Of a stretch of 64,000 bases of DNA, positions 206 to 15,791 are shown piece by piece. Source of the stretch: Obrimoposthia wandeli (lineage: Eukaryota); NCBI GenBank assembly GCA_977020255.1, contig CDROCS010003914.1, positions 248,001 through 312,000 of the forward strand, in the 5' to 3' direction. How positions within the stretch are numbered: position 1 is the stretch's first letter; each line of letters begins with the position of its first letter. The notes beneath the pieces were generated by a model. That model had not been told where the DNA came from. It did not search any database and worked only from the letters and a program-made list of their open reading frames with translations. Made by a program: the position numbers and the translations under genes.

Positions 206-356
206 CAGACTGTGTGAAAACTCCCAAAAGTATCCAAAATACGCCTTTCTTATGTATGTTTTAAATTACCAGATTAACAAAATTAATAACTTAGATAGCA
301 CCTGTTTTCTTAGAAACGGGAAATTAACAGGTTGGTCTGAGTTCTCGCACAGCCTG
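206..356. mobile_element. 151-bp MITE with IS1182-type terminal inverted repeats (copy 1)
   Basis: Ends are cagactgtgtgaaaactc and gagttctcgcacagcctg, the same as the IS at 10419-12131. Near-TSD gacg/gaca. Same length as, and clearly similar to, the copy at 7700-7850. Confidence 0.85.
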
Positions 357-414: not shown

Positions 415-960
415 TTAGCCCTTGCTAATTTTATTGTCAGGCATCAACTTGTTTATAACCTCATTGAAGTTATTACAAAATACTATTTTAGCATTATGTT
501 CCAAGGTAAAGTCTAGAACCCGAAGCATATTATCGTTATCAAATTTTTGATTCCACCAAAACATTTTCATAAATGAAGCAAAGGTTTCTTTACGGAATTG
601 ACCCTGAAAAAATTTACGTTTGAAGAAGCGTTTGAATATAAGCCATTGCCTAAGTAAAACGGATGGAGTTAGGATAACAATAATATCAGCATCACGAAAA
701 GAGTCGTCAAGCCATTTAAAATATACACCTTCAACTATCCAATTATCTTGAGACAATACTTGATTCAATTTTTCAGTCCTAGACTCTTCACTAGATCGAA
801 CATAAGTATTCTTGTCTTGATCCCAAAAAATTTTATCAAGATCGTAAGCATTTGTACTTGTTAATTCTTGAAGCTTAGTAGAGCTAAAAGTTTTACCACT
901 ACCAGGATCTCCAATGATGTGAATTTTACGATACTGCAAACGTGTACCCCATTGATTCAT
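415..960 (-). CDS. P-loop kinase, FlaR/topology-modulation protein (adenylate kinase-like) family
   Basis: KIHIIGDPGSGKT Walker A, DLDKIFW and WIVEGVY motifs typical of the family. Confidence 0.8.
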   Translation of the reverse strand: MNQWGTRLQYRKIHIIGDPGSGKTFSSTKLQELTSTNAYDLDKIFWDQDKNTYVRSSEESRTEKLNQVLSQDNWIVEGVYFKWLDDSFRDADIIVILTPSVLLRQWLIFKRFFKRKFFQGQFRKETFASFMKMFWWNQKFDNDNMLRVLDFTLEHNAKIVFCNNFNEVINKLMPDNKISKG

Positions 961-1351: not shown

Positions 1352-1797
1352 GTGCTGCCCCAGCCATTACTGCTATCACCACCATTAATTTCACATAAAT
1401 TGCTAACTGAATTTCTGAATGCGAATTTAGCTTCCACCGAAGATACAGAGGAAGAAGGTATAGATCATATTTACGCAACGGCTGTGGACATAGCGGCACA
1501 AGATCATGGTGATACCATTTCACTGGAGAATAAAGTAACCCTTTCTATTGCTATACGGCTCAAAGCTGAAGAGTTTATGTGGCGATACGTTGCTGATAGT
1601 AGTGAAATTGGAGGGAGCCAAACAGGTAGACTTTTGATCGTTTATGCAAGGAGAATTCAGACCTTAATAATGCCTTTGCTCCTATACGCAAAGTGCTAAG
1701 TCAGGTGTCTTTGATGACATTAGAAAATATTCATCTTAATTCGTTTATGTATGAGCCTTTAATGGATATGTCCATCTATCATTTAAGCGGCACATAG
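1352..1797 (+). pseudogene. C-terminal fragment of an AAA/ABC-type ATPase-like protein of the kind found near restriction-modification loci
   Basis: LENKVTLSIAIRLKAEEFM, then after a frameshift MTLENIHLNSFMYEPLMDMS ending at TAG 1795-1797. Recalled as a conserved C-terminal signature of that family. The N-terminus is missing. Confidence 0.45.
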
Positions 1798-2560: not shown

Positions 2561-2589
2561 TTGACAATATTTACTTTTTTAAATATATT
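2561..2589 (+). promoter_or_regulatory. Near-consensus sigma70 promoter upstream of the rep-like gene
   Basis: TTGACA (2561-2566), 17-bp spacer, TATATT (2584-2589). Confidence 0.6.
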
Positions 2590-2714: not shown

Positions 2715-2961
2715 AAATTTATTTTTATTTACCGCTTCGCGAAAAAAACAAACCCATTCCTCATTGCACTGCTAAATATAATGGATAAATTTAATTAACT
2801 TTTACATAAAAAAGATAAGTAATAAAAGTTAATTGAAACTAAAAATAATTTATTTACTTAAAAGTATGGAGCATAAGTTAAAAATGTATTACTATTAATG
2901 TACGTTAAAATAATGACCACTTTTAATGCTTAATCTACTACTTAAAAACAAAGAGAATATT

Positions 2962-5574
2962 ATGAAAACTACTAATAAGAGTGCTGCTAGAGCACCAAGA
3001 ATCTACATTACTAAAAGCGAAGAATTTAAAGAAAATGTTGAAGATTTAGTTATTGTTACTAAGTTCACAGAATTTGAAATTGAAAAACAGATTAATAGCA
3101 ATATTAAGAAATCTACTATAATTTTAGTTACTAGTAAAAACGATGCGTACAGAGATTCTTTTATTGCACGAAATTTTAAAATTAAAATGCAACTAGAAGA
3201 TGTTGTACATAACTACGCTAGCTTAAGTAAATTAGCAGTAAGCATAGCGCAAGCATCATTTATACAAGGCGAAATAAGTTTAGATAAGTCTTTTAACTTC
3301 ATTGTTAACACTCTTATAGATCAAATTCCTTCAAAAATTATTCTTGCAAATGCGGTTGAAATATTTAAAACATTTAGCACTGATACTAGTAAATATGAAA
3401 ACGAATTAAAGATAAAAATTGAAGAACGAAATATAAAGATCATAAATTCAGTGTCAGTTGATCCAAATAATCCAAACGCCGAATTTTTGGAGATGGATCA
3501 TGGACCAGAATTAGTAAATCACATGCTTAAAAGACCAGGTAATTACGCATTAACTGGAGGTTTGGGTACATTTAAAACAACTAATGCAATACTTCCTCTT
3601 TTTGAAAAGTTGTGTGGAAAAAGCAAGTTTCCGATTTTATGTACTGCTAAAAAAATATTGGTATCATCTCTTATTTCCGACAAAGACAGTCGACATTACC
3701 AGAATGCAAAGTATATTTTAGGTGAAAATAACTCAGTAAATATGCCAATCTCTGGCACGGTTGGTGTAGTAAACTCCATTTTTGGTGGTGATAAATACAA
3801 TTTTGGCGACTTCAACAAGGCAAGTAGTGCATTACTAGTAGAAGAAATTGAGGATGTGTTGGCGCAGATGTCAAGTAAGGCGGTTGGAAATGGCACACTT
3901 GATGAGCGTGCAGAGCTAATCGAAAATTTTTATAAACAAATGCAAAAATCAGAATTAAACGTAATTGCAGATAGCATGCTTAGTAATGCTACAGTTAATA
4001 AAATCGCAGAAATTACGGGCAAAAAAGTAATTATATGCAAACCAAAAAATGCAAAGAAAAATGACTTAACTGTTAATTATTTTCAATCCGAAAGTCAATC
4101 TGTCGATTCTACAATCCAAGCTTTAGAAGCAGATAAAAAAGTAGCCAGCTTTTGCGATGCTAGCCATAACGAAAACAGATCAAGATTTAATGAGTTGCAC
4201 GAAGCAGTATCAATGAATCTAGAAAATAGCTTAAAAATAGATGGAGAACTAACAGGAAAGGGTGGTTCAGGCGGATTTATTGATAATATAGATGCAGAAC
4301 TTAATAAATATCAACACGTAATGATCAGTCCTGTAATCAGTTCAGGCGTAAGTATTATGACTGATGAATACAGTAAAGTGTCACTTTTGGGTTACCAAAC
4401 TTTTGATCCAAAACAGCTTATACAAAGCATTAGAAGATTCAGAAAAGTCATAGACATCGATTTATGTATCACTAACACAAACCGAAAATTCCCTACATCT
4501 ACATCAGCGATTTTAGTTAACGAGCTAATGACAGAGCTAACAGATACTGAATTTACTGATGAAACATTCAATGAATTTTTTGGCAACAAAGCTATAAAAA
4601 CAGTAACAACCCAAATTGCACAACAAAACGAACTTAGACAAAACTACATAAACACTGTTTTAGTCATTCTTGAATTTTTAGGCTTTAAGATTAATTTAGT
4701 AAAAGAAGATATGAAAGCAAAGAAAAGAGGTGCTAAAGCAATTAAAGATGGTATGTGTGCAGCACGTGGCGAGCGTGCCAATAAAATTATATCATTGAAA
4801 AAAATAGCAAATGATGAAGCTAACAGAATAAGTAGCAATAAAGATTTTTCAACGCAACACGAAAAAAACAGCTTAGCTGCTTATAAAATGTACGATTTTT
4901 ATAAAGTAGATAAAATCGATCAGGAATTAATTGAATTTGATAGTGCAGGAAACGGCAAGATAATCATAGATAATATTCGTTATGCAAAAACCGATATCCC
5001 AAATTCTATAAAAAACGATGAGCTAATTAAGCGACATACAATAAAAAAAGTGTGTGAAATGTTAAACATTAACACTGATAAAATGAATGGAGAATTTTTT
5101 GAAAGTGATAGTAAAGAATTTTTCAATTGGGTAACGACAGGAAATTTAGAAATTGAAGGTTTAAAAAACATTACTGCAAAAACAGCAATAGAAATCACTT
5201 TTCCATTTGCAAGTATTAGCACACAGCCTGCACGTGTTGTTAAATCAATCTTAAGGAGTGGTTTTTATCTCGACACAAAACAAGAATGCAAAGAAAAAAA
5301 AGACATTGTATCGGCATGCGAGAAAAAATATTTTGTAGTGAAAAGCGAGAAGTTTGATATTGCTATAAGCTACTACAATGCAATAATTGAAAAAACTGCT
5401 AAAGCTACTACTATTATTACTAAGTGCAGCAACAAAAAAACCAAGGCTGAATTCCTGAACACAATAAATAACAAAAACAAGATAAGACTTGGTAAACCAG
5501 TTAAGCCAAAGAGCAAGAAGAAAAAGAAAGAATTGAAATTAAAAAACGGAGTGCCGCTTTTAGTAATTACTTAA
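2962..5574 (+). CDS. Putative replication protein, UL9-like/CyRepA1-family SF2 helicase domain (ORF open from 2926)
   Basis: Ordered SF2-like motifs: GGLGTFKTT (I), LLVEEIEDVL (II), VIADSML (III), SPVISSGVSI (V), QSIRRFR (VI). Basic C-terminal tail. Followed by a terminator. Confidence 0.6.
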   Translation: MKTTNKSAARAPRIYITKSEEFKENVEDLVIVTKFTEFEIEKQINSNIKKSTIILVTSKNDAYRDSFIARNFKIKMQLEDVVHNYASLSKLAVSIAQASFIQGEISLDKSFNFIVNTLIDQIPSKIILANAVEIFKTFSTDTSKYENELKIKIEERNIKIINSVSVDPNNPNAEFLEMDHGPELVNHMLKRPGNYALTGGLGTFKTTNAILPLFEKLCGKSKFPILCTAKKILVSSLISDKDSRHYQNAKYILGENNSVNMPISGTVGVVNSIFGGDKYNFGDFNKASSALLVEEIEDVLAQMSSKAVGNGTLDERAELIENFYKQMQKSELNVIADSMLSNATVNKIAEITGKKVIICKPKNAKKNDLTVNYFQSESQSVDSTIQALEADKKVASFCDASHNENRSRFNELHEAVSMNLENSLKIDGELTGKGGSGGFIDNIDAELNKYQHVMISPVISSGVSIMTDEYSKVSLLGYQTFDPKQLIQSIRRFRKVIDIDLCITNTNRKFPTSTSAILVNELMTELTDTEFTDETFNEFFGNKAIKTVTTQIAQQNELRQNYINTVLVILEFLGFKINLVKEDMKAKKRGAKAIKDGMCAARGERANKIISLKKIANDEANRISSNKDFSTQHEKNSLAAYKMYDFYKVDKIDQELIEFDSAGNGKIIIDNIRYAKTDIPNSIKNDELIKRHTIKKVCEMLNINTDKMNGEFFESDSKEFFNWVTTGNLEIEGLKNITAKTAIEITFPFASISTQPARVVKSILRSGFYLDTKQECKEKKDIVSACEKKYFVVKSEKFDIAISYYNAIIEKTAKATTIITKCSNKKTKAEFLNTINNKNKIRLGKPVKPKSKKKKKELKLKNGVPLLVIT

Positions 5575-5675: not shown

Positions 5676-5706
5676 AAAAAGCCCGCTTGTATAAAGCAGG
5701 CTTTTT
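5676..5706 (+). terminator. Intrinsic terminator after the rep-like gene
   Basis: aaaaagcccgctt-gtata-aagcaggcttttt hairpin with A and T tracts. Confidence 0.75.
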
Positions 5707-5827
5707 GTGTGGCTACCAAACCACTAACAAAGATTATGTAGGTGACCAAACCTACTTATAAAATTATAGTATATAACTGCTTAATTTGCAACCAAAAAAC
5801 CAAATTTCACACCAGATTCCACACTTA

Positions 5828-5874
5828 ATTACCTATCTAATAATATAAAAATTCAATATTTGTTGGTTGCAATA
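5828..5874 (+). repeat. 47-bp direct repeat, copy 1
   Basis: attacctatctaataatataaaaattcaatatttgttggttgcaata. Differs from 12311-12358 by two substitutions and one indel. Confidence 0.9.
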
Positions 5875-6186: not shown

Positions 6187-6513
6187 TTATCTTGTTTGAG
6201 CCTGCTGAAGAGGGCTAAGCACTTCTATCTCAATACTATCTGCTTGTATCAGCGATACTAGTTTATTAAAACTGTCTTTCTCTGCCACTAAGTGATTGGA
6301 ATCATGTGCTTGTTGTTCGGTTTTCCAATAATAAATGGCAAGCCATTCATTATTTCCTCGTTGGTATAGTGTTTGCTCAATAAAGCCAGGGAGGTTTTTT
6401 ACGTCATTACTTAGTGTCGTCATCGCTTGTATCATTTGCTGTTTATCCACCCCTTTATTGGCTGTCCAGCGAACGGTTTCATATACGGGTTGATTGATGG
6501 TTGAGTCTGACAT
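6187..6513 (-). CDS. Antibiotic-biosynthesis-monooxygenase-like (dimeric alpha-beta barrel) protein
   Basis: 108 aa with the LPGFIEQTLYQ..WLAIYYWKTEQQA pattern. Divergent from the LysR gene. Confidence 0.6.
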   Translation of the reverse strand: MSDSTINQPVYETVRWTANKGVDKQQMIQAMTTLSNDVKNLPGFIEQTLYQRGNNEWLAIYYWKTEQQAHDSNHLVAEKDSFNKLVSLIQADSIEIEVLSPLQQAQTR

Positions 6514-6618
6514 TATTTCTTCCTATTGTTTGTAGAGGATGTTTTAGATAATAACGGATTCATAAACGTTGATAATGCTATAAAATGTAAGATCACTCTT
6601 TCTCTGTGGGAATGAATC

Positions 6619-7506
6619 ATGGTTGTTTTTGATGATGCAACATTGTTTAAGCGTATTGTTGATTTAGGCTCATTGGCTAAGGCCGCTGAGAGTTTAGATA
6701 TAAGTGCATCGGCGGTAAGTAAGCATTTGGTTAGGCTAGAAAAAGCATTGAATGTGCAGTTGTTGAAGCGCACTACTCGGCGTCAACACCTTACTGAGGC
6801 TGGCCTGATCTTTTATCAGCGCCTCCACACGATAGAAGGTGATTGGTTAAGCAGTCTTGATGAAGTAAGAAATGTGCATGCGCAGCCAAAAGGACAATTA
6901 ACAATAGCCACACCGCAACCCATTGCGAGCCGTTTTTTAATGCCCTTGCTAGCAGCATTTCAGCATCGTTACCCTAAGATACAATTAACTATATTAAATC
7001 GAGCACTCGAATCTTTGCCATGTTCCGAAGCTGATATTTCCATTAGCCGCGAGCTAGAAAATTACCACTCGGCCATAATGGTGGCAGTACCATTTTACGA
7101 CTATCACAATAGTTTATTTGCCTCTCCCGAATTTATTCAAATCCACGGTCAGTTACAAAATATAGAAGACTTATCACGTATGCCCTGTGTAACCTATGGT
7201 GCTTTGGGTCATAATCCGATATGGCATTTTTATAAAGATATGGAGCAGGTGGCCTCTGTTACTCCTCAAATAATGTGTAAAGCGGATAATACAGAAGTGC
7301 TAATCAATGCCGCCGTTAATCATATCGGTATTACCTATCTGCCAGCAGCAATCGTAGAGCAAGAAGTAATCAGCAAGAGATTGGTTGCTGTGTTGCCTGA
7401 GTTCCACAGCCAAACCTATAAAACAGTGGCTTATTATCCTAAAATGGAATTTATGCCACGTAAAATACGATTATTTTTGGATATGCTAAAAACCTTTTAT
7501 CGATAA
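6619..7506 (+). CDS. LysR-family transcriptional regulator
   Basis: N-terminal HTH (GSLAKAAESLDISASAVSKHLVRLEKALNVQLLKRTTR) and a substrate-binding domain; 295 aa. Confidence 0.92.
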   Translation: MVVFDDATLFKRIVDLGSLAKAAESLDISASAVSKHLVRLEKALNVQLLKRTTRRQHLTEAGLIFYQRLHTIEGDWLSSLDEVRNVHAQPKGQLTIATPQPIASRFLMPLLAAFQHRYPKIQLTILNRALESLPCSEADISISRELENYHSAIMVAVPFYDYHNSLFASPEFIQIHGQLQNIEDLSRMPCVTYGALGHNPIWHFYKDMEQVASVTPQIMCKADNTEVLINAAVNHIGITYLPAAIVEQEVISKRLVAVLPEFHSQTYKTVAYYPKMEFMPRKIRLFLDMLKTFYR

Positions 7507-7699: not shown

Positions 7700-7850
7700 C
7701 AGACTGTGTGAAAACTCACTAAAGTATGTAAATTACACTTTTTTCGCATATCTTTTAAATTATCAGGTTAATAAAATCAGTAACTTACATCGCACTTGTT
7801 TTCTTAGAAGCGGGAAATCAAAGATTTGATCTGAGTTTTAACACAGCCTG
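7700..7850. mobile_element. 151-bp MITE with IS1182-type TIRs (copy 2), 4-bp TSD TGTC
   Basis: cagactgtgtgaaaactc ... gagttttaacacagcctg, flanked by tgtc on both sides. Confidence 0.88.
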
Positions 7851-8023
7851 TGTCAATTCCTGCCTTTATCTCTATGAAGTAATAGAGGCGGGAAACGGGC
7901 AAAGGACTAAACCGCTAGCGCGGTAATGGTGCCAGCTTCAACTCTTTTATATTACCCAAGCTTATTAATAATCTCTTATCCTAGAACAGGGCAACATGAC
8001 CCTCTAAGATAGGAGTACCTAGC

Positions 8024-8900
8024 ATGAGTATCTCAACTGAACTCATTAGTCCACTGCGCCAGCGCATGATCGATGACATGATGATGCGTAAACTCGCAGC
8101 AAAAACACAACGCGCTTATATCTGCGCCGTCCTTAAACTCACCCATTTCTTAAAGCATTCTCCCGCGACAGCAACAGCAGAAGAACTACGGCTATTTCAG
8201 TTACAGCTTGTCGGCCAAGGTGCCTCAGCAATCACCATTAATGCCACTATCACAGGCTTGAAATTCCTGTTTGAAGTGACCTTACGAAGATAATATGCTG
8301 GCAAAGATGAGCACGATCACTGTCCCTAGGCATCTGCCTGAAGTACTAAAGTATCGATGGTAGCACGTTTCTGAAAGCGTAATAAAGAGCCTAAATACCG
8401 TGCTGCGCTGGCATCGCCTATGGTTCTGGGCTGCGTGTAAGTGAGATTGTAGTCCTTAAAATCAGTGATATTGACAGCCAGCGGATGGTCATCCGCGTCA
8501 ATCAGGGCAAAGGACACAAAGACAGGTACGCATTACTCTCTCCATTGTTGCTGCATCAGCTACGAGATTGGTGGAGCTTTGCTCATTCAAAGGGAAGAAT
8601 CTTGCATAATGGTTGGTTATTTCCAAGGGCTAATTTTACTGATCACTTATCCACTCGACAGTTAAGCCGAGTGTGCAGAACGACTGCCGATGCTGCTGGT
8701 ATCAGTAAACGTGTTTCGATGCATACTTTAAGGCATAGCTTTGCGACGCATTTACTCGAAGCTAAAGTCGGTATTCGGGTGATTCAAGTATTACTAGGGC
8801 ATAAAAAACTGGAGACGACAGCGTTGGCACAGAAGTAGCAACACCACAACTGCTTAGTGAAATGCCGTAGCCGCAGAATGCTCTAGAATTGTCAACGTGA
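8024..8900 (+). pseudogene. Tyrosine recombinase (phage integrase SAM4 N-domain plus catalytic domain), broken by stop and frameshifts
   Basis: SPLRQRMIDDMMMRKLAAKTQRAYI (8024-8293). GLRVSE-like segment near 8430. VNQGKGHKDRY and HTLRHSFATHLLE..IQVLLGHKKLETT (8485-8838). Confidence 0.85.
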
Positions 8901-8910
8901 TACTGATGTT

Positions 8911-10079
8911 ATGTCTAACACTCACTTAGAAATGGCAGATATTTTTCGCCTCTACGGTAAAACTTGGCGTACAGCACATGCAAGGCATATTTCATTGGCT
9001 CAACTAAAAGTGATGTCAGCGATAGAGAACTGCCGCACTCAAGCTTTGGGTGGCCATCTGTTGTGTTGTGAATCCTGTCACCGCAAGCATATCTCTTACA
9101 ATTCTTGTCGCAACCGCCACTGTCCTAAATGTCAGGCAAGCTCTGCCAAACGTTGGTTGGAGGCTCGACAAGTTGAGTTATTGCCCGTTGATTATTATCA
9201 CTTGGTGTTCACGCTTCCCCAGCCCCTGAGTAATCTTGCCTATTACAATAAAACGTTGATGTACGGTTTGTTATTGCAGGCCGCTGCTGAAACATTACTG
9301 ACGATTGGCGCGGACCCAAAGCGCTTAGGCGCTCGCCTTGCGGTTACCTTTGTATTGCATACTTGGGGATCAGCTTTGACTCATCACCCACATGTGCACG
9401 GCATTGTTCCTGGTGGAGGTCTTTCTTTGGATGGTGAGCGTTGGATTCAGTGCCGCTCGGGGTATTTCTTACCTGTGCGGGTGCTATCGCGATTATTCAG
9501 GCGCCTATATTTACAGAAGCTTAGCCAATCACATGCACGATTGCAGTTTTTCGGGGAGTACTCAGCCCTGTGTGAAGAAGAAGCTTTTCACAAATGGCTG
9601 AATCCCTTAAAGCGTATTGAATGGGTAGTCTACGCCAAGAAACCTTTTGCGGGTCCCAAGGCAGTACTGGCTTATTTAGCACGCTATACTCATCGCGTTG
9701 CCATTGCTAATAGTCGCTTGGTGTCTGCTGATGCAGAAACGGTTAGCTTTCGCTGGAAAGATTACCGACTGAAAGGGATACAACGCTATCAGGTTATGAG
9801 CCTCGCGACAGGTCAGTTTATTCAGCGCTTCTTATTGCATGTATTACCCCGAGGCTTTCATCGCATTCGCCACTACGGTTTTATTGCCAATGTCGGGCAG
9901 CGAAAATTTAACCCGTGCGTGAGTTGTGCTGTCAAAGAAGAAATATTAAGATCAATATTGCCGTTATCTAAGGAAATAATGGAACATATGGCAGTTTTTA
10001 CTGCCCAGATTGTGGTAATCCAATGATTGTCCTTGAAGTATTAATGCGTAAGCAGCAACCGCGGGCTTCGCCTGTTTAG
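8911..10079 (+). pseudogene. IS91-family (HUH/Y2 rolling-circle) transposase with a frameshifted C-terminus
   Basis: Zn-binding CRTQALGGH..CESC..YNSCRNRHCPKCQ, HUH motif LHTWGSALTHHPHVH, and YLARYTHRVAI. The C-terminal CPDCGNPM..QPRASP lies in another frame ending at 10079. Confidence 0.88.
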
Positions 10080-10418
10080 TCTTGGGATTAGATAAAATAG
10101 TATTCGATTTCATCGGTTCGTTGCGATGAGAGGAGGCTGCGTGCTGAATCTCGTAAACACCAAAATTGGCTCGGTAATTAACTGACTAGAGTAAATAAGG
10201 TATGAAAATAGGCTTAGAAAATGGCATGATTATATGGAATAAGAAGGTGTATGGTAATCTGAGCATGACGGAGTTATTTCAAATCCCCATAGTTCGAAAC
10301 ATAGAACAAGCTTCAAAGTAACGTCCCGCGGTTTCCTCCCTTGAGGCCTATAAGACATCTGCTTCTAGCAATGCAGATATAGCTGATTCTGTGGTGGCAA
10401 ATATCTTATAACCCTAAA

Positions 10419-12131
10419 CAGACTGTGTGAAAACTCAGAATAAGACCATTAAACATCGTTAAGTATGCTATTTAACCTGTCAAATGACTTAACCACCGAA
10501 TATTAACATTTGAACGGAATATTAGTTTTATAAGGCTTAGGTGAGCTAATAATGATAAATATGCTGTTTTGAGGTGTTTTATGGCGTAATTTGAAGCTAA
10601 ATGTACCTTTATTGTCTGATCGCTTCCATTAACCCAGTTGTTCCCAGTATCGCCATCATGCGTTTTAGGTTGTAAGCCAGCACATGCAAATTCATTTCTA
10701 TACTCACATTCTTTTTGCGCTTCATTAAGAAGTGTGTCGCACCCATCCACATTTTAATCGTGCCAAACGGATGCTCTGAATCATCATCGAGTCGCTGTTG
10801 CATAGCGTCAATTTCTGCTTCATAAATCCAGCGCCTCATTTCCTAGAGCTCCTTTAATGTGCCGTGCATTTATCCCCTAATCGTTCGTCACGGCAAGCAG
10901 CTGGGTTAACGTAAACTTTCTGTTCGAGGCCTTTCTCCTGTCGCACTCGACGATAGGGTAATGCCTGCCCGCAAAACATATAGATATCTTGGCCCTTGTC
11001 GTATTTGAATAACGATTTGTTGAATATGCCTTTCTTTGCCGCACCTGATGTATCGATTTGCGGAACATTTACCGTCATGCCTAAGTCTTGTGTCGCCTTG
11101 ATATCAATTCGGCTGAAATAGCCTTTATCAGCAATAATGGTGATATCTTTTTTACATAATGTTTCTTGAACCTGCTCTGCTACTAAAGTCAGTTGGCCTC
11201 TGTCAGTTGTCATCACGATATCGTGTGCAACAATCAAGTGATGCTTTGTATCTACAGCACTTTGCACATTATAACAAACCTGCCTTTGCATGTGATGTGT
11301 CTTCATCAAACGGGCATCAGGGTCAGTTCGTGATATCTGCTTGTCTGGATGTGCATTCACTTCTACTTCAAGCGCTTTAAGCTCCACTAATCGCTGTTCA
11401 AGCCATGCTAACTTTGAGGTTGAGACAGTGTTTGACGTCTCCTTTTCATCTTTGTCTTTGCTATCCATTTGACTTAAGTATTTTTGGATATTCTTCTCAA
11501 CGCGGTCAATATGGAACTGCACTTTGCTGGGTGTGTAATTCTTTGATTTGTTGTTGACGGCCTTGAATTTACTGCCGTCAATAGCGAAGAGTGATTCGCT
11601 GAACATATTCATCTGGCGACACATCTCTACAAACTGACGGCACACGCTTCTTATACCTTTGCCATTATCCTTTCTGAAGTCTGCAATTGTTTTAAAGTCT
11701 GGCATTAATCGACCCAGCAGGCACATCAATTCAACGTTGCGATGACTTTCTTTTTCTAAGCGCCGAGAAGATTGAATACGGTTGAGATAACCATAGATAT
11801 AGAGTTTTAGGAGGATGGCTGGGTGGGCCAGTATCCTTAGCTATAACGCGCTTAAACCCAAGTGTTTCAAGGTTTAAACTTTCTACAAATACATCCACGA
11901 CTCGAACGGAATTATCTTCAGTAACAAAGTCATCAAGTACTTCGGGGAACAAGGTGGTTTACGTTCCTGACTGGCCTAAAATATGATGTGCCATCACGTT
12001 TACCCTATGGTTTGGCTGACCATATCATTATACTAAAAGTGATGGTTTAATAGGCGATAACATTAAGATTGATCGATCATAAGTAGCTAGAGCTTAGATC
12101 AAAAGGTAATCAATAGTTTTCACACAGCCTG
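10419..12131 (-). mobile_element. IS1182-family insertion sequence (1713 bp), transposase inactivated
   Basis: TIRs cagactgtgtgaaaactc and tagttttcacacagcctg. The transposase is split over several ORFs. Confidence 0.9.
10609..11994 (-). pseudogene. IS1182-family transposase (fragmented)
   Basis: FPEVLDDFVTEDNSVRVVDVFV; LLGRLMPDFKTIADFRKDN; FAIDGSKFKAVN; TDPDARLM; ADKGYF; EHPFGTIKMWMGATHFL. Confidence 0.9.
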
Positions 12132-12204
12132 TATCACGTCCTTCCAAGGGCAGCTAGAATTCCTCGCGGAATTAAATGAACACAACATTAAAATGAGTGC
12201 AAAC

Positions 12205-12310: not shown

Positions 12311-12358
12311 ATTACCTATCAAATAATATAAAAAATTCAATATTTATTGGTTGCAATA
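12311..12358 (+). repeat. 47-bp direct repeat, copy 2
   Basis: attacctatcaaataatataaaaaattcaatatttattggttgcaata. Confidence 0.9.
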
Positions 12359-12695: not shown

Positions 12696-12885
12696 AATGG
12701 AAATTCGGTAAAAAATCTCGGGGTACAGAATCTAGGGTACAAAAAGGGGATATTTAGTGCAGTAAATATTATTTAATAGAGTAAATATTACTCATTAAAA
12801 ATATATATTACTGTAAATAAAATTTTTCCTTTTTGTCTAAATCCTTGTTTTATTGTACCTTTTAAATATTTTACCGTTAACAAAG

Positions 12886-13242
12886 TGGTGGAGGTGGCGG
12901 GTTTCGAACCCGCGTCCGCCAATCCGCTGCCTCAAGATCTACATGCTTAGACACTTCTACTAAGTTAACCCAGCACGGCCCGAAGGTCAGGGCGTTTAGG
13001 GCGAGCCTCTTTAGTTTTAACCGTTCAGCTTGAGACAAAGCTTCCGGGCGATCCCATCTCATATGACACAACAAATCCTCTAGTTATAGGCACCTGAAGG
13101 TGTTGCGTAGCAGGCTTAAGCTGCTAGTGCGTAGTTATCGTCGTTTGCAACTATAACTTTGTAGTAAGGGATTAACGTGATTCACTACACTCACGACATG
13201 CACTTAAGGTTTTGTAATCGGCGTCGAATCCAAGTCACCCCC
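12886..13242 (-). ncRNA. ssrA: tmRNA, tag peptide ANDDNYALAA
   Basis: 5' GGGGGTGACTTGGATTCGAC; 3' GGGTTCGAAACCCGCCACCTCCACCA; resume frame gca aac gac gat aac tac gca cta gca gct taa. Confidence 0.97.
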
Positions 13243-13386: not shown

Positions 13387-14748
13387 TTAACGGATAGCGA
13401 TTAATAGCATTTGCCCATCACGTTTTACTTGTAAGAACATGGTGTTACTACTGCGCTTTAGTGCTTGCTTGAAATCTTTTAAATTACGAATGGTAATTCG
13501 GTTAGCTTGAATAATTAAATCTCCAGGTTCTAACCCGTTATAAGCGGCAACAGAATCTTGTGTTAATGAAACGACCAAAATACCTTGCTCGTTACGGCTT
13601 TTTTTGAAAGTTGCACCAGCAAGCAGTGGGTGAAAATTATCTTTTATTGCTCTATGGGTACCTCGGCTACCAAACTGCTTAGGGTTGCCGACCTCAAGCT
13701 TGAATGTACGGTTACGACCATCGCGAAGTGCGATTAAGGTGATTTTGTCGCCAATGTTTTTGATGCCTATTTGGCTGCGCAATTGGCTTGAGGAATTAGT
13801 GCTAGCTCCATCAACAGAGATGATAATATCACCGGCTTGTATACCTGCTCTAAGTGCCGGTGTGTTGTTGCCTATGCCGGTTATTAATACACCTTGTTGG
13901 CCGTTTTTTAAATTGAAAGCTTGGCGTAAATCATCAGTAATATCTTGAATACTCACACCGATTTGACCGCGTTTAACTTCACCGTATTTTAGAATTTGTT
14001 GCATGCTGGCTTTAGCCATGTTGATCGGAATAGCAAAACCAATACCCACATTGCCACCAGTAGGTGCAATGATGGCAGAATTGATGCCAATTAAACGACC
14101 CGCTAAGTCCACCAATGCACCACCAGAATTACCGGGGTTAATTGAGGCGTCTGTTTGTATATAATTTTCGTAACCTTTTAAGCCCAGCCCTGAGCGGCCT
14201 AGTGCACTGACGATACCGGTAGTGACTGTTTGGCCTAATCCAAATGGGTTTCCTATTGCTACTGCAAAATCACCGACTTGTACTCTTGATGAATCGGCCA
14301 ATTTAACTTCGTTTAGATTTTTGGCATTAAGCTTTAATATAGCAATGTCTAAATCGGGATCTGAGCCTAGCAGTTGCGCTTTAAAGTTACGGCCATCTAT
14401 CAAGGATATCCGTATTTCGTCAGCTTTTTCAATGACATGATAGTTTGTCATTACAATCCCCTTACTTGCGTCAATGATAACGCCAGATCCTGCACTGCTA
14501 CTTCGCTGCGGTGATTGCTGCTGTCTTTGAGAGTCAAAGAAACGTCTAAAAAAAGGATCTCTCATTAAAGGGTTTTGTTGAGTTTTCCCATTATAGAAAG
14601 TAGATATGCTTACTACAGCAGCATTAACTTGACTTAACATGGGGGCTAAAGAGGGGAGTATTTTACCCTGTGAATCTGTGGCAGGTAATCCGGCGTAGCT
14701 AGTCGCATTAAAAAAAAATAAAAAAAGTAAAAAGAATTTTGTTTTCAT
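13387..14748 (-). CDS. Do/DegQ-family periplasmic serine protease with two PDZ domains
   Basis: Signal peptide, SLAPML, TNYHVI, IQTDASINPGNSGGAL, two PDZ repeats. Confidence 0.93.
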   Translation of the reverse strand: MKTKFFLLFLFFFNATSYAGLPATDSQGKILPSLAPMLSQVNAAVVSISTFYNGKTQQNPLMRDPFFRRFFDSQRQQQSPQRSSSAGSGVIIDASKGIVMTNYHVIEKADEIRISLIDGRNFKAQLLGSDPDLDIAILKLNAKNLNEVKLADSSRVQVGDFAVAIGNPFGLGQTVTTGIVSALGRSGLGLKGYENYIQTDASINPGNSGGALVDLAGRLIGINSAIIAPTGGNVGIGFAIPINMAKASMQQILKYGEVKRGQIGVSIQDITDDLRQAFNLKNGQQGVLITGIGNNTPALRAGIQAGDIIISVDGASTNSSSQLRSQIGIKNIGDKITLIALRDGRNRTFKLEVGNPKQFGSRGTHRAIKDNFHPLLAGATFKKSRNEQGILVVSLTQDSVAAYNGLEPGDLIIQANRITIRNLKDFKQALKRSSNTMFLQVKRDGQMLLIAIR

Positions 14749-14878
14749 GGTTGCCCCAGAATATTGAATATTGAATATCGCAATATTTGAGTGTAAAGCA
14801 CAAGAAAGGTTCTATGTGGGATAATAAATTTTGCAGGAGGTATATGCCTTGCTACTTTAAGCAAGGCTATTGAAGAGG

Positions 14879-15355
14879 TTATCTAGTGCTAAGAACACGT
14901 TGCTTTTGACGGCTCCAATCTTTCTCTTTTTCAGTGGCACGTTTATCGTGTTGTTGCTTACCGCGCACAAGAGCGATTTCACACTTTACATGATCATCTT
15001 TCCAATAAAGCGCTAAGGCAATACAAGAAAAGCCTTTAGCTTCTACCGCAAATGCTAGATTGGATATCTGTCTGCTGTGTAGCAACAGCTTTCGCGGCTT
15101 GCGAGGTTCAGTAACATAATGAGTAGAGGCTTGTTTTAACGGAGTCATTGTGGCATTAAGCAGCCAAGCTTCACCATCTTTAAACATTACGTATGAGTCA
15201 GTTAACTGGGCACGACCGTCTCTTAGGCTTTTTACTTCCCAACCGACCAGCACGAGTCCTGCTTCTATTTTTTCATCGATATGGTACTCATGTCTTGCGC
15301 GCTTATTTAGACATATAGTATTACCGGAATTTTTTGCTTTTTTCTTTTTAGCCAT
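14879..15355 (-). CDS. smpB: SsrA-binding protein (start adjusted from 15424)
   Basis: [37 protein letters not shown]. Confidence 0.97.
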
Positions 15356-15791
15356 GCCGGCAAGTATAAACCATGCAGATAAGTTTTCGATAGTTAATGG
15401 CTTGGAAAATGCGATTTTACGCAATTAATTGAATCAGTTTAGATTTTCTATCTAAAAATGAATATGAATCAATATGTTTGGTTGATTTTTGAACATTTTG
15501 CTGGCAACTTATAATCTTTGATCAATAAGTAAATGTTAGTTGGATAAAGTGTTTACCTGTCATTTTTTATAAAACAGTACAGTTAAGGTTATTTAATATA
15601 AGAAATAAAAATATTATGTCGTTTGTTTTAGTGTTAATAGAGATAAATGGCCCCATTAAGCAACAGTAAATCGCAAAAGCTGATAGCTAAACAAGAGTAA
15701 TTTAAAGGCATTAGGATTACGCATACTTTATGTGGTTATTAAAGTTAGCAGTGTTCAAAACTAAGAGGTGGGGAAAGCATTTTGGTGAAGG

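What the first reader, a model, noticed from the sequence alone, without database searches (positions are those of the whole stretch)
2962..5574. Intact ~870-aa UL9/CyRepA1-like helicase replication protein with non-canonical motifs in an otherwise decayed island
Seen: this is the only large unbroken ORF in the visible island, with its own promoter and terminator. SF2-like motifs are in order but altered: Walker A GLGTFKT instead of GxGKT, Walker B EEIE instead of DExx, and motif VI QSIRRFR. The ~180-aa N-terminus has no recognisable primase apart from a weak TOPRIM-like IILVTSKND, and the tail is very lysine-rich. Known: CyRepA1-type proteins initiate replication of cyanobacterial plasmids. 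Inference: the replicon of a poorly characterised integrative element or satellite, or a helicase fold repurposed for DNA binding or defence.
Basis: partly seen in the sequence, partly recalled or inferred. Interest (0 to 1): 0.7.

Follow-up and report, generated by a model that had tools for sequence, protein, structure and literature searches.

The report
Primase-less UL9/CyRepA-like replication helicase
This is an intact gene for an origin-binding-type helicase, related to known plasmid and phage replication initiators, stranded in an insertion-riddled genomic island next to the tmRNA gene of a marine bacterium; it is an uncharacterised branch of a known family, not a new kind of system.

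Summary
The ORF is real (2962-5574, 870 aa; 882 aa from an upstream in-frame ATG) and every quoted motif is present. Its helicase core and C-terminal domain are homologous to CyRepA1-family plasmid replication proteins (NCBIfam E 2e-41, below the curated cutoff; hhalign probability 99.9% to the Rep of a 5.2-kb Acinetobacter plasmid) and to the middle of telomere-phage RepA. [quoted passage not shown] About 75 same-architecture clusters exist, mostly in aquatic Gammaproteobacteria, always in phage contigs or variable islands. Unlike CyRepA1 and N15-type RepA, they lack a TOPRIM domain.

The "altered motifs" are mostly family norms. EE in Walker B occurs in 45% of members and motif VI is canonical. 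Only Gly-to-Phe before the P-loop lysine is unusual, and non-Gly recurs in 12 of 64 members whose other catalytic residues are invariant.

The gene sits in a low-GC variable region starting exactly at the tmRNA 3' end, with broken IS genes and a defence-gene fragment nearby. Two ACCAAACC boxes plus an AT-rich stretch just downstream are conserved in the closest homolog's locus, a candidate origin.

Best reading: replication initiator of a phage- or satellite-derived integrative element. Function is untested. Interest is moderate.

The parts
2962..5574 (+). Helicase gene (870 aa; an in-frame ATG at 2926 would add 12 aa). Residue numbers in this report use the 882-aa frame from 2926.
   Evidence: Family alignment starts at M13. 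A GAGA-type ribosome-binding site lies before 2962 and none before 2926. GC is 31.5% against 42% for host genes.
2980..3450 (+). N-terminal alpha/beta domain (aa 19-175). It is family-specific and has no recognisable primase or TOPRIM signature.
   Evidence: AF2 pLDDT is about 87-95 here. No Pfam hit. Not aligned to the CyRepA1 N-terminus. No invariant residues.
3478..4485 (+). SF2 helicase core, two RecA-like domains (aa ~185-520).
   Evidence: NCBIfam CyRepA1 aa 211-705. PHROG 4913 aa 197-672. Profile hit to herpesvirus origin-binding protein RecA1. Foldseek.
3556..3579 (+). Walker A / motif I, GGLGTFKT (aa 211-218). Phe replaces the Gly that normally precedes the lysine.
   Evidence: position 216 is G in 52/64 and F in 2/64; K217 is invariant.: the 12 non-Gly members are scattered, 15-44% identical to each other.
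3832..3852 (+). Walker B / motif II, LLVEEIE (aa 303-309).
   Evidence: position 306 is D in 35 and E in 29; E307 is invariant; E309 is E in 58/64.
4423..4443 (+). Motif VI, QSIRRFR (aa 500-506).
   Evidence: Q500, R504 and R506 are invariant in 64/64.
4498..5478 (+). C-terminal mostly helical domain (aa ~525-851). It occupies the position of the origin-binding domain of UL9-type proteins and is homologous to the C-terminal part of plasmid CyRepA1 as far as aa ~785.
   Evidence: hhalign query 133-785 to template 240-877. AF2 confident to aa ~850. The Foldseek alignment to 9hgi spans 783 columns.
5479..5571 (+). Disordered lysine-rich tail (aa 852-882). It is the end of a ~55-aa extension absent from the seven closest relatives that end near aa 825-835.
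   Evidence: alignment; pLDDT below 50; K+R make up 32% of the last 50 aa.
2561..2589 (+). Best sigma-70-like promoter match (TTGACA-17-TATATT), inside a 640-nt intergenic region of 22.9% GC.
   Evidence: count not above shuffles.
5676..5708 (+). Intrinsic-terminator-like hairpin followed by TTTTT.
   Evidence: inverted repeat I3.
5709..5755 (+). Two related 16-18-nt boxes with internal dyad symmetry and a shared ACCAAACC core (5709-5724 and 5738-5755). Candidate initiator-binding sites.
   Evidence: Conserved in the locus of the closest homolog (L054, protein only 41% identical): blastn 74.6% over 67 nt, E 1.4e-4; alignment. The same core lies within 100 nt after the stop in L004 and L052.
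5756..5824 (+). AT-rich stretch (TTATAAAATTATAGTATATAA) followed by further AACCAAA-type repeats (12-nt period, 2.2 copies). Candidate unwinding element.
5828..5874 (.). Left copy of a 47-nt direct repeat.
   Evidence: about 96% identity to 12311-12358; identity confined to this core.
12311..12358 (.). Right copy of the 47-nt direct repeat, about 530 nt from the tmRNA 3' end. The two copies bracket a 6.4-kb IS-rich segment.
12886..13242 (-). tmRNA gene (ssrA). Its 3' end at 12886 is where similarity to related genomes stops.
   Evidence: ARAGORN; Rfam 198.6 bits; blastn to relatives.
1352..1699 (+). Remnant of a PDC-S46-like candidate defence gene. One truncated fragment covers about 12% of the profile (positions 586-670 of 719).
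   Evidence: PADLOC E 6.7e-15.
415..960 (-). Intact AAA_18 (nucleotide-kinase-like P-loop) ORF, 181 aa.
6187..7506 (.). Divergent pair: a 108-aa ORF (-) and a LysR-family regulator (+). Both are intact cargo genes.
8024..10026 (+). IS91-type unit. The tyrosine-recombinase gene is broken into two pieces (at least one interruption). It is followed by an unbroken Y2 rolling-circle transposase gene.
   Evidence: Pfam. The same integrase plus IS91 transposase pairing is annotated in many plasmids.
10418..12136 (-). DDE-transposase insertion sequence with terminal inverted repeats. The transposase frame is in four pieces (three interruptions).
   Evidence: inverted repeat I4.

Best explanation
The gene encodes the replication initiator of a mobile genetic element: an SF2 helicase of the UL9 / CyRepA1 / telomere-phage RepA lineage. 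The element derives from a phage, phage satellite or integrative island that entered the variable region at the 3' end of ssrA in an Oceanospirillales-type marine gammaproteobacterium.

Proposed mechanism (inferred, not shown):
1. The C-terminal domain recognises a cognate origin. The best candidate is the pair of ACCAAACC boxes and the adjoining AT-rich stretch directly 3' of the gene.
2. The two RecA-like domains use ATP to open and unwind that DNA.
3. Because this family lacks the TOPRIM primase domain carried by CyRepA1 and N15-type RepA, priming would be left to the host or a helper.

The surrounding island has since been remodelled by two insertion sequences and their MITEs, and no island integrase is visible in the window. 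The gene may therefore now be an intact but stranded replication module.
For: Shown:
- Homology to experimentally defined plasmid initiators: NCBIfam CyRepA1 E 1.9e-41, and 41 of 46 family members hit that model.
- The family profile aligns to the CyRepA1-family protein of the 5.2-kb plasmid pARA7 with probability 99.9% over 604 columns, including the C-terminal domain.
- tblastn finds only CyRepA1 genes in plasmids and RepA of the telomere phages VP882 and phiHAP-1. PHROG 4913 'replication' scores E 8e-27.
- Fold: the AF2 model has pLDDT 89.1 and pTM 0.87. [quoted passage not shown] The best viral matches are origin-binding-protein helicases, with TM up to 0.61. The family profile also hits the origin-binding protein by sequence, E 4e-6.
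- Catalytic residues K217, E307, Q500, R504 and R506 are invariant in 64 of 64 members.
- Every homolog context read is a mobile or variable one: phage contigs with portal/MuF or terminase genes, a large serine recombinase 2.5 kb away, tRNA-Arg adjacency plus SIR2-HerA, and flanking BREX, toxin-antitoxin or restriction genes.
- In the window, GC is 31.5% against 42% for host genes. Similarity to relatives stops at the tmRNA 3' end, and no relative carries the gene there.
- A non-coding block 3' of the gene is conserved with the locus of a homolog whose protein is only 41% identical. The same ACCAAACC core follows the gene in two further loci.

From the literature: CyRepA proteins support autonomous plasmid replication (PMC10079941). 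[quoted passage not shown]
Against: - No experiment bears on this protein or its ~800-aa family.
- It scores 142.7 bits against a CyRepA1 cutoff of 200 and lacks that family's N-terminal TOPRIM-related domain.
- The Gly before the P-loop lysine is Phe, whereas all eight closest relatives have Gly. This could impair ATP binding.
- The window shows no integrase, excisionase or att duplication of the tmRNA end belonging to the island.
- The candidate origin rests on four loci. It was absent in the one locus fetched afterwards as a test (L058) and in seven others, and the motif was chosen after looking. In L052 the core sits in the loop of what looks like an ordinary bidirectional terminator, as does a related CAACCAAA loop in L053.
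- No iteron array was found upstream or inside the gene.
Confidence: 0.6

Rival explanations
1. Intact-looking relic. The gene is the last unbroken piece of a dead element and no longer does anything. The Gly-to-Phe change in the P-loop and the C-terminal read-on into A-rich sequence would be the first signs of decay.
For: The neighbourhood is degraded: a truncated PDC-S46-like fragment, two broken IS genes and long stretches with only short ORFs. No island integrase is seen. Phe216 is absent from the eight closest relatives. The ~55-aa lysine-rich extension is missing in most close relatives and is modelled as disordered. No close relative (above 42% identity) exists in 1.84 billion representatives, so recent purifying selection cannot be measured.
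Against: 870 stop-free codons in 31% GC DNA have a chance probability of about 2e-34. All five invariant catalytic residues and all eight nearly invariant positions are kept. The protein aligns without gaps of note to homologs through aa ~830. Non-Gly at position 216 recurs in 12 of 64 scattered members that keep every other catalytic residue, including an unrelated member with the same GTFKT. This argues that the variant is tolerated.
Confidence: 0.2
2. Exapted helicase. The family, or this copy, works in phage or plasmid defence or counter-defence rather than replication, as a DNA-sensing or translocating motor that partners with neighbouring genes.
For: Homologs sit directly beside BREX in two unrelated loci, beside SIR2-HerA, and beside toxin-antitoxin and AcrVA2-like genes and GmrSD/HNH genes. 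Three diverged loci share a convergent module downstream of the helicase: an ADP-ribosylglycohydrolase plus one or two small conserved ORFs, and in two of the three a ~400-aa ORF. A defence-gene fragment lies 1.3 kb upstream in the window.
Against: The protein matches no PADLOC model at E <= 0.1. The partner genes differ from locus to locus, and the glycohydrolase module is absent from the window. Defence genes are typical cargo of mobile islands, so adjacency is expected under the replication reading. Two homologs sit in phage contigs next to packaging genes. The whole helicase plus C-terminal domain is homologous to proteins that are the only large gene of small plasmids.
Confidence: 0.12
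3. The conserved 3' boxes are not an origin. They would be a recombination (att) site or part of a transcription-termination or RNA element, and the true origin lies elsewhere or is lost.
For: The boxes have internal dyad symmetry and fold as small hairpins (z = -2.2 in the window). In L052 and L053 the same or a related core forms the loop of strong terminator-like hairpins (z = -4.9 and -3.8). A 47-nt direct repeat that brackets a 6.4-kb insertion begins only 4 nt after the box region. In N15-type phages the origin is reported to lie inside repA (own knowledge, not checked here).
Against: In the window a separate, better terminator precedes the boxes. The boxes lack a T-run. Repeated boxes next to an AT-rich stretch beside the initiator gene is the standard layout of theta-type origins (general knowledge). 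Rfam finds no known RNA there.
Confidence: 0.25

Closest known systems
CyRepA1 / CyRepA2 plasmid replication proteins (NCBIfam NF042913; Slr7037 of Synechocystis pSYSA; also annotated on Acinetobacter plasmids such as pARA7)
   Same: The SF2 helicase core and the following C-terminal domain are homologous: E 1.9e-41, and hhalign probability 99.9% over 604 columns. The motifs are the same: GxGK[TS], [DE]ExE, Q..R.R. These proteins are carried by mobile DNA.
   Different: It scores below the curated cutoff (142.7 against 200 bits). It has a ~130-175-aa unrelated N-terminal domain in place of the ~240-300-aa DUF3854/TOPRIM-related domain. It lies in a chromosomal island or phage rather than a plasmid, and no plasmid in PLSDB carries a member of the ~800-aa family.
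RepA of telomere (linear plasmid) phages: VP882, phiHAP-1, N15 type (PHROG 4913)
   Same: The central helicase region is homologous: PHROG E 8e-27 to profile positions 497-976 of 1290, and tblastn E 5e-10 to VP882 RepA. Some family members are themselves encoded in phage contigs.
   Different: RepA has about 1240-1320 aa with a Toprim_3 primase domain upstream of the helicase. That whole N-terminal part, and the last ~300 profile positions, are absent here.
Herpesvirus origin-binding protein UL9 (PDB 9hgi/9hgj; Pfam PF02399)
   Same: It is the best structural match in the PDB: E 1.6e-13 over 783 aligned columns. It is the top PDB sequence hit for the family profile. [quoted passage not shown] Motif II is DE-x-hydrophobic/E type.
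   Different: Identity is about 10% and global TM only 0.35-0.38. Pfam PF02399 does not report the window protein, and only 1 of 46 family members hits it. An extra N-terminal domain is present. I could not test whether the UL9 DNA-recognition motif or dimer interface is present.
Replication modules of phage satellites (P4 alpha, PICI Pri-Rep, PICMI primase)
   Same: The setting is similar: a single large replication gene with an adjacent origin, in small islands at tRNA/tmRNA-type sites that carry defence cargo (PMC10803314).
   Different: Those use SF3/D5-type (DUF3987/DUF5906) or other primase-helicases, not an SF2 UL9-like helicase. No integrase, AlpA or packaging-interference genes are seen in the window.

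Membership tests
CyRepA1 (NCBIfam NF042913, equivalog_domain) | Score at or above the curated cutoff of 200 bits | tested here: not met
   142.7 bits, E 1.9e-41, aa 211-705 to model positions 9-501 of 595.
CyRepA1 (NCBIfam NF042913, equivalog_domain) | N-terminal DUF3854 / TOPRIM-related domain preceding the DEXDc helicase (PMC10079941) | tested here: not met
   No Toprim or DUF3854 hit at E <= 1. The hhalign alignment to the pARA7 protein starts at query aa 133 and template aa 240.
CyRepA1 (NCBIfam NF042913, equivalog_domain) | Homologous helicase core plus C-terminal region | tested here: met
   hhalign probability 99.9%, E 8e-36, 604 columns. 41 of 46 relatives hit the model.
CyRepA1 (NCBIfam NF042913, equivalog_domain) | Supports autonomous replication of the DNA that carries it | not testable with these tools
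   Known only for cyanobacterial members.
UL9-like SF2 helicases / Pfam PF02399 Herpes_ori_bp | Pfam model match above the gathering score | tested here: not met
   Not reported for the window protein at E <= 1. 1 of 46 relatives hits at E 1e-3. Longer remote homologs do match.
UL9-like SF2 helicases / Pfam PF02399 Herpes_ori_bp | Fold closest to UL9 among solved structures | tested here: met
   9hgi_B E 1.6e-13 against 7.7e-8 for the next family. BFVD top hits are origin-binding-protein helicases.
UL9-like SF2 helicases / Pfam PF02399 Herpes_ori_bp | Sequence-specific origin binding by the C-terminal domain | not testable with these tools
   There is only a candidate site: the conserved ACCAAACC boxes.
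SF2 helicase (general) | Motifs I, II and VI with catalytic Lys, Glu and Arg fingers in order | tested here: met
   K217, E307, Q500, R504 and R506 are present and invariant in the family. The Gly before K217 is replaced by Phe.
N15-type phage RepA (PHROG 4913) | Primase (Toprim) plus helicase fusion of about 1200-1300 aa | tested here: not met
   Only profile positions 497-976 of 1290 are matched. VP882 RepA has Toprim_3 at aa 270-375, which is absent here.
tRNA/tmRNA-integrated genomic island | Begins at the 3' end of the RNA gene, with foreign composition and variable content among relatives | tested here: met
   Similarity to 10+ relatives ends at 12882-12886. The flank is not syntenic among relatives. 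GC is 23-34% near the helicase against 39.5% for the rest of the window.
tRNA/tmRNA-integrated genomic island | Own integrase next to the RNA gene and a direct repeat of its 3' end at the far border | tested here: inconclusive
   Neither is seen within the window. The only integrase remnant belongs to an IS91-type unit. The far border may lie beyond base 1.
Known anti-phage defence systems (PADLOC-DB 2.0) | Match to a defence-system protein model | tested here: not met
   No hit for the helicase at E <= 0.1.

The most novel reading that the evidence does not exclude
The ~800-aa, primase-less UL9/CyRepA-like helicases, with their own N-terminal domain and a cognate box-plus-AT-rich origin placed just 3' of the gene, would be the signature replication module of an unrecognised class of small integrative elements or phage satellites in aquatic Gammaproteobacteria. 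These elements would ferry defence cargo such as BREX, SIR2-HerA and PDC-S46-like genes. The window would hold one such element caught in decay at ssrA.
Probability: 0.2. Interest if true: 0.6.

Novelty: new variant of a known kind. Interest (0 to 1): 0.4.

Why it matters
Bacterial relatives of the herpesvirus origin-binding helicase are barely studied. The only functional data are for cyanobacterial CyRepA plasmids and, by inference, telomere-phage RepA. The recent UL9 structure papers that I searched for those terms mention no bacterial, phage or plasmid relatives.

This locus points to a distinct ~75-cluster branch that has shed the primase domain and lives in phages and chromosomal islands. 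If that branch is confirmed as an initiator with a defined origin, it would:
- give annotators a marker for a set of mobile islands that now read as "hypothetical protein";
- add a compact SF2-type initiator to the known repertoire of replication systems;
- supply bacterial comparators for UL9-type origin recognition.

For this window alone the practical outcome is modest: a better annotation of one gene and of an ssrA-linked island.

Tried and rejected
- **Single-sequence AlphaFold** gave an unusable model (pLDDT 33). The run with the 64-sequence alignment was used instead.
- **The word-indexed protein search** found only two relatives because low-complexity words saturated it. The exhaustive search was needed.
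- **Locus scans.** With alignments A2 and A3 they failed for lack of a conserved 7-10-column stretch. A single-protein scan of genome contigs found nothing. The viral-contig scans by protein and by the double-box DNA pattern found nothing. The metagenome scan returned only two loci.
- **The window's own proteins** are not in the protein collection, so strain-level comparison and dN/dS were impossible.
- **TOPRIM or primase in the N-terminus** was rejected.
- **Iterons.** No convincing array was found upstream of or inside the gene.
- **Neighbours shared** between the window island and homolog loci: none by tblastx or tblastn.
- **Small circular plasmid?** The closest homolog's 4.7-kb contig has no terminal overlap.
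- **Universality of the ACCAAACC box** was tested on a newly fetched locus (L058) and failed there.
- **Known RNA families** in the island: none credible.
- **PICMI-type satellite** was rejected because those use DUF3987/DUF5906 primases.
- **The integrase remnant as the island's own integrase** was rejected. It is the usual partner of IS91-type transposases.
Full report

Yes. An unbroken reading frame runs from 2926 to 5574 on the + strand (882 aa).
- Family alignments start at the second methionine. M13 is nearly invariant as first residue. A GAGA-type ribosome-binding site precedes it.
- The ORF has 31.5% GC and about 8.5% stop-codon probability per random codon. The chance of 870 open codons is about 2e-34.
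- All quoted strings are present.
- A terminator-like hairpin with a T-run follows the stop by about 105 nt.
- The promoter claim is weak. The best sigma-70-like match is 370 nt upstream, and such matches are no more frequent than in shuffles.
- The gene is the largest ORF in the island but not the only intact one. A LysR regulator, an IS91-type transposase and an AAA_18 ORF are also unbroken.

**2. What the protein is**

*Sequence searches.*
- Pfam reports nothing credible, and the PDB sequence search with the single protein found nothing.
- NCBIfam's CyRepA1 model matches aa 211-705 at E 1.9e-41. The score of 142.7 bits is under the curated 200.
- PHROG 4913 "replication" matches aa 197-672 at E 8e-27, on positions 497-976 of a 1290-position profile.
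- tblastn against plasmids finds only genes annotated as CyRepA1-family replication proteins, in Acinetobacter and cyanobacteria at 20-24% identity.
- tblastn against phages finds only RepA of the telomere phages VP882 and phiHAP-1.

*The family.* An exhaustive phmmer search of 1.84 billion representatives gave 176 hits.
- The best 75 or so are proteins of about 720-960 aa that align over nearly the full length.
- The closest relative is only 42% identical.
- The more remote hits are 1000-1290-aa proteins matched in their middle. A sample of these carries Toprim_3 plus Herpes_ori_bp domains, as VP882 RepA does.

*Profile comparison.* A profile of 64 family members aligns to the 979-aa CyRepA1-family protein of the 5.2-kb plasmid pARA7 with probability 99.9% over 604 columns, query aa 133-785 to template 240-877. 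Homology therefore covers the helicase and most of the C-terminal domain. It does not cover the N-terminal 132 aa, which replace the plasmid protein's 240-aa N-terminal region.

*Structure.*
- With the 64-sequence alignment AlphaFold gives pLDDT 89.1 and pTM 0.87. Only aa 1-18 and 852-882 are disordered.
[quoted passage not shown] All other SF2 helicases (Mfd, SecA, RecQ-like, Hel308) start at about 1e-7. Global TM is low (0.35-0.38), as expected for a multi-domain protein in another conformation.
- Against predicted viral structures the top hits are "origin-binding-protein" helicases of giant viruses, herpesviruses and phages, with TM up to 0.61.
- The family profile also hits the same origin-binding protein by sequence, E 4e-6.

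**3. The "non-canonical motifs"**

Column counts over 64 members:
- K217, E307, Q500, R504 and R506 are invariant.
- The residue before E307 is D in 35 members and E in 29, so EEIE is a normal family state.
- Motif VI is the family consensus.
- The one real oddity is Phe216 in place of the Gly that precedes the P-loop lysine. 52 of 64 members have Gly, including all eight closest relatives.
- The 12 non-Gly members (R, N, S, K, F) are only 15-44% identical to one another and keep every other catalytic residue. One member only 18% identical to the query has the same GTFKT.

I read this as a tolerated, recurrent variant rather than decay, but its effect on ATP binding is unknown.

The N-terminal alpha/beta domain (aa 19-175) is confidently modelled. 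It has no invariant residues, no conserved acidic pair and no Toprim or DUF3854 match. The TOPRIM suggestion is not supported.

The lysine-rich end belongs to a ~55-aa extension that most close relatives lack, and it is modelled as disordered.

**4. Where it sits**

- A tmRNA gene lies at 12886-13242 on the - strand, with smpB nearby.
- SmpB is 95% identical to that of an Oceanospirillales MAG and 82-91% identical to Nitrincolaceae/Oceanospirillaceae MAGs and Osedax-symbiont relatives.
- In more than ten of these genomes DNA similarity to the window ends at 12882-12886, the tmRNA 3' end. None carries the helicase there.
- The ssrA 3' flanks of the relatives are not syntenic with each other either. 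This is a variable hotspot.

Left of ssrA the window holds, in order:
- about 530 nt with two short ORFs;
- a DDE-type IS whose transposase is in four pieces;
- an IS91-type unit with a tyrosine-recombinase gene in two pieces and an unbroken Y2 transposase, a pairing annotated on many plasmids;
- a 151-nt MITE derived from the DDE IS;
- a LysR regulator with a small divergent ORF;
- the helicase gene;
- a 640-nt intergenic region of 22.9% GC;
- a fragment matching 12% of the PADLOC candidate defence protein PDC-S46;
- an AAA_18 ORF and a second MITE copy.

"Decayed island" is a fair description. No integrase attributable to the island is visible, and its far border may lie beyond base 1.

A 47-nt direct repeat (5828-5874 and 12311-12358, about 96% identical, identity confined to that core) brackets the 6.4-kb IS-rich segment. 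This fits a later site-specific insertion between the helicase gene and ssrA. I only describe this and did not join the flanks.

**5. Contexts of homologs**

I read 13 loci, about 10 distinct contexts:
- two phage-like contigs, one with portal, Mu-F and tail-terminator genes and one with large and small terminase genes;
- one locus with a large serine recombinase 2.5 kb away and umuDC;
- one next to tRNA-Arg and SIR2-HerA;
- two unrelated loci abutting BREX, Zobellella and a metagenome contig;
- Tolumonas with two paralogs 7 kb apart among ParE/Phd, AcrVA2-like and IS3 genes;
- Oceanisphaera beside an IS;
- the closest homolog beside an MqsA antitoxin;
- one beside methylase, GmrSD and HNH genes;
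- Thalassotalea in a ~7-kb insert between sugar-metabolism and efflux genes.

Three diverged loci share a convergent ADP-ribosylglycohydrolase module, which the window lacks. The helicase matches no PADLOC model.

**6. A candidate origin**

Immediately after the terminator lie two related boxes, GTGGCTACCAAACCAC (5709-5724) and GTAGGTGACCAAACCTAC (5738-5755). An AT-rich stretch and more AACCAAA repeats follow.
- The same two boxes, and part of the AT-rich stretch, follow the gene of the closest homolog. Its protein is only 41% identical and its contig has 46% GC. blastn gives 74.6% over 67 nt, E 1.4e-4, the only non-coding similarity between the loci.
- The ACCAAACC core also occurs within 100 nt after the stop in the Oceanisphaera locus and in L052. 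A related CAACCAAA loop occurs in L053.

Caveats:
- The motif was chosen after looking.
- In L052 and L053 it sits in the loop of strong terminator-like hairpins.
- It is missing from eight other loci, including L058, which was fetched afterwards as a test.

Different subclades may have different cognate sites, but that is an assumption.

**7. Mechanism**

The best-supported reading (about 0.6) is a replication initiator of a mobile element. The C-terminal domain would bind a cognate origin, possibly the 3' boxes. The RecA-like core would melt and unwind the adjoining AT-rich DNA using ATP. Priming would be left to host or helper enzymes, because the TOPRIM domain of its plasmid and phage relatives is absent.
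- Shown: homology, fold, motif conservation, mobile contexts, foreign composition and the conserved 3' block.
- Inferred: origin binding, ATPase competence of the Phe variant, and current activity.

Rivals:
- an intact relic (0.2);
- exaptation for defence (0.12);
- separately, the 3' boxes being an att or terminator element rather than an origin (0.25, not exclusive of the main reading).

**8. Novelty and score**

This is not a new kind of system. It is an uncharacterised, primase-less branch of the UL9 / CyRepA / phage-RepA helicase initiators, missed by Pfam and below NCBIfam's cutoff, living in phages and islands rather than plasmids. Hence "new variant of a known kind", interest 0.4.

- No herpesvirus sequence was fetched or used. 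One paper passage returned by a tool displayed viral origin oligonucleotides, and I made no use of them.
- Possible slip: my first notebook entry lists ORF-piece coordinates for the two broken IS genes, copied from the ORF table, before I applied the rule against listing break places.

Noticed in passing
window 206-356 and 7700-7851; related ends at 10418-10437 and 12115-12136: There are two ~151-nt MITE-like copies, 79% identical to each other. Their terminal inverted repeats (CAGACTGTGTGAAAACT...) match the ends of the broken DDE insertion sequence at 10418-12136, so they look like non-autonomous derivatives of that IS.
   Followed up: partly
window 5828-5874 and 12311-12358: A 47-nt direct repeat (~96% identical) brackets the 6.4-kb segment holding LysR, a MITE and both insertion sequences. 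It may be the att pair of a nested site-specific insertion. The left copy starts 4 nt after the candidate origin.
   Followed up: partly
window 1352-1699 (+): A 115-aa ORF matches positions 586-670 of the 719-position PADLOC model PDC-S46 (E 6.7e-15). It is a truncated remnant of a candidate anti-phage defence gene.
   Followed up: no
L047 12449-16133, L052 11023-13015, L053 12646-15813: In three diverged homolog loci the helicase gene is followed by a convergent module. It comprises an ADP-ribosylglycohydrolase (35-43% identical between loci) and one or two small conserved ORFs of ~125-140 aa. L047 and L053 also share a ~400-aa ORF (29% identical, weak SprT-like hit in L053 only). No PHROG match except the glycohydrolase. 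The linkage may be functional, or it may be the core of one element type.
   Followed up: partly
L002/L003 2777-5299 and 10001-12445: Tolumonas carries two diverged paralogs of the helicase 4.7 kb apart (gene starts 7.2 kb apart) in one island. They match the window protein at 27% and 34% identity. ParE/Phd, GGDEF and AcrVA2-like genes lie between and around them.
   Followed up: no
L001 3267-8192 and L057 7628-13526: BREX gene clusters lie directly next to helicase homologs in two unrelated loci, in opposite orientations. In L057 a WYL-domain regulator gene starts about 100 nt after the helicase stop.
   Followed up: no
window 13387-15424 (-): A DegP/HtrA-like serine protease gene (Trypsin_2 plus two PDZ domains) sits between smpB and ssrA. 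This arrangement is shared with the related Oceanospirillales genomes.
   Followed up: no
window 8024-10026: An IS91-family Y2 transposase is preceded by a tyrosine-recombinase gene, here broken. The same two-gene unit is annotated on many proteobacterial plasmids.
   Followed up: partly
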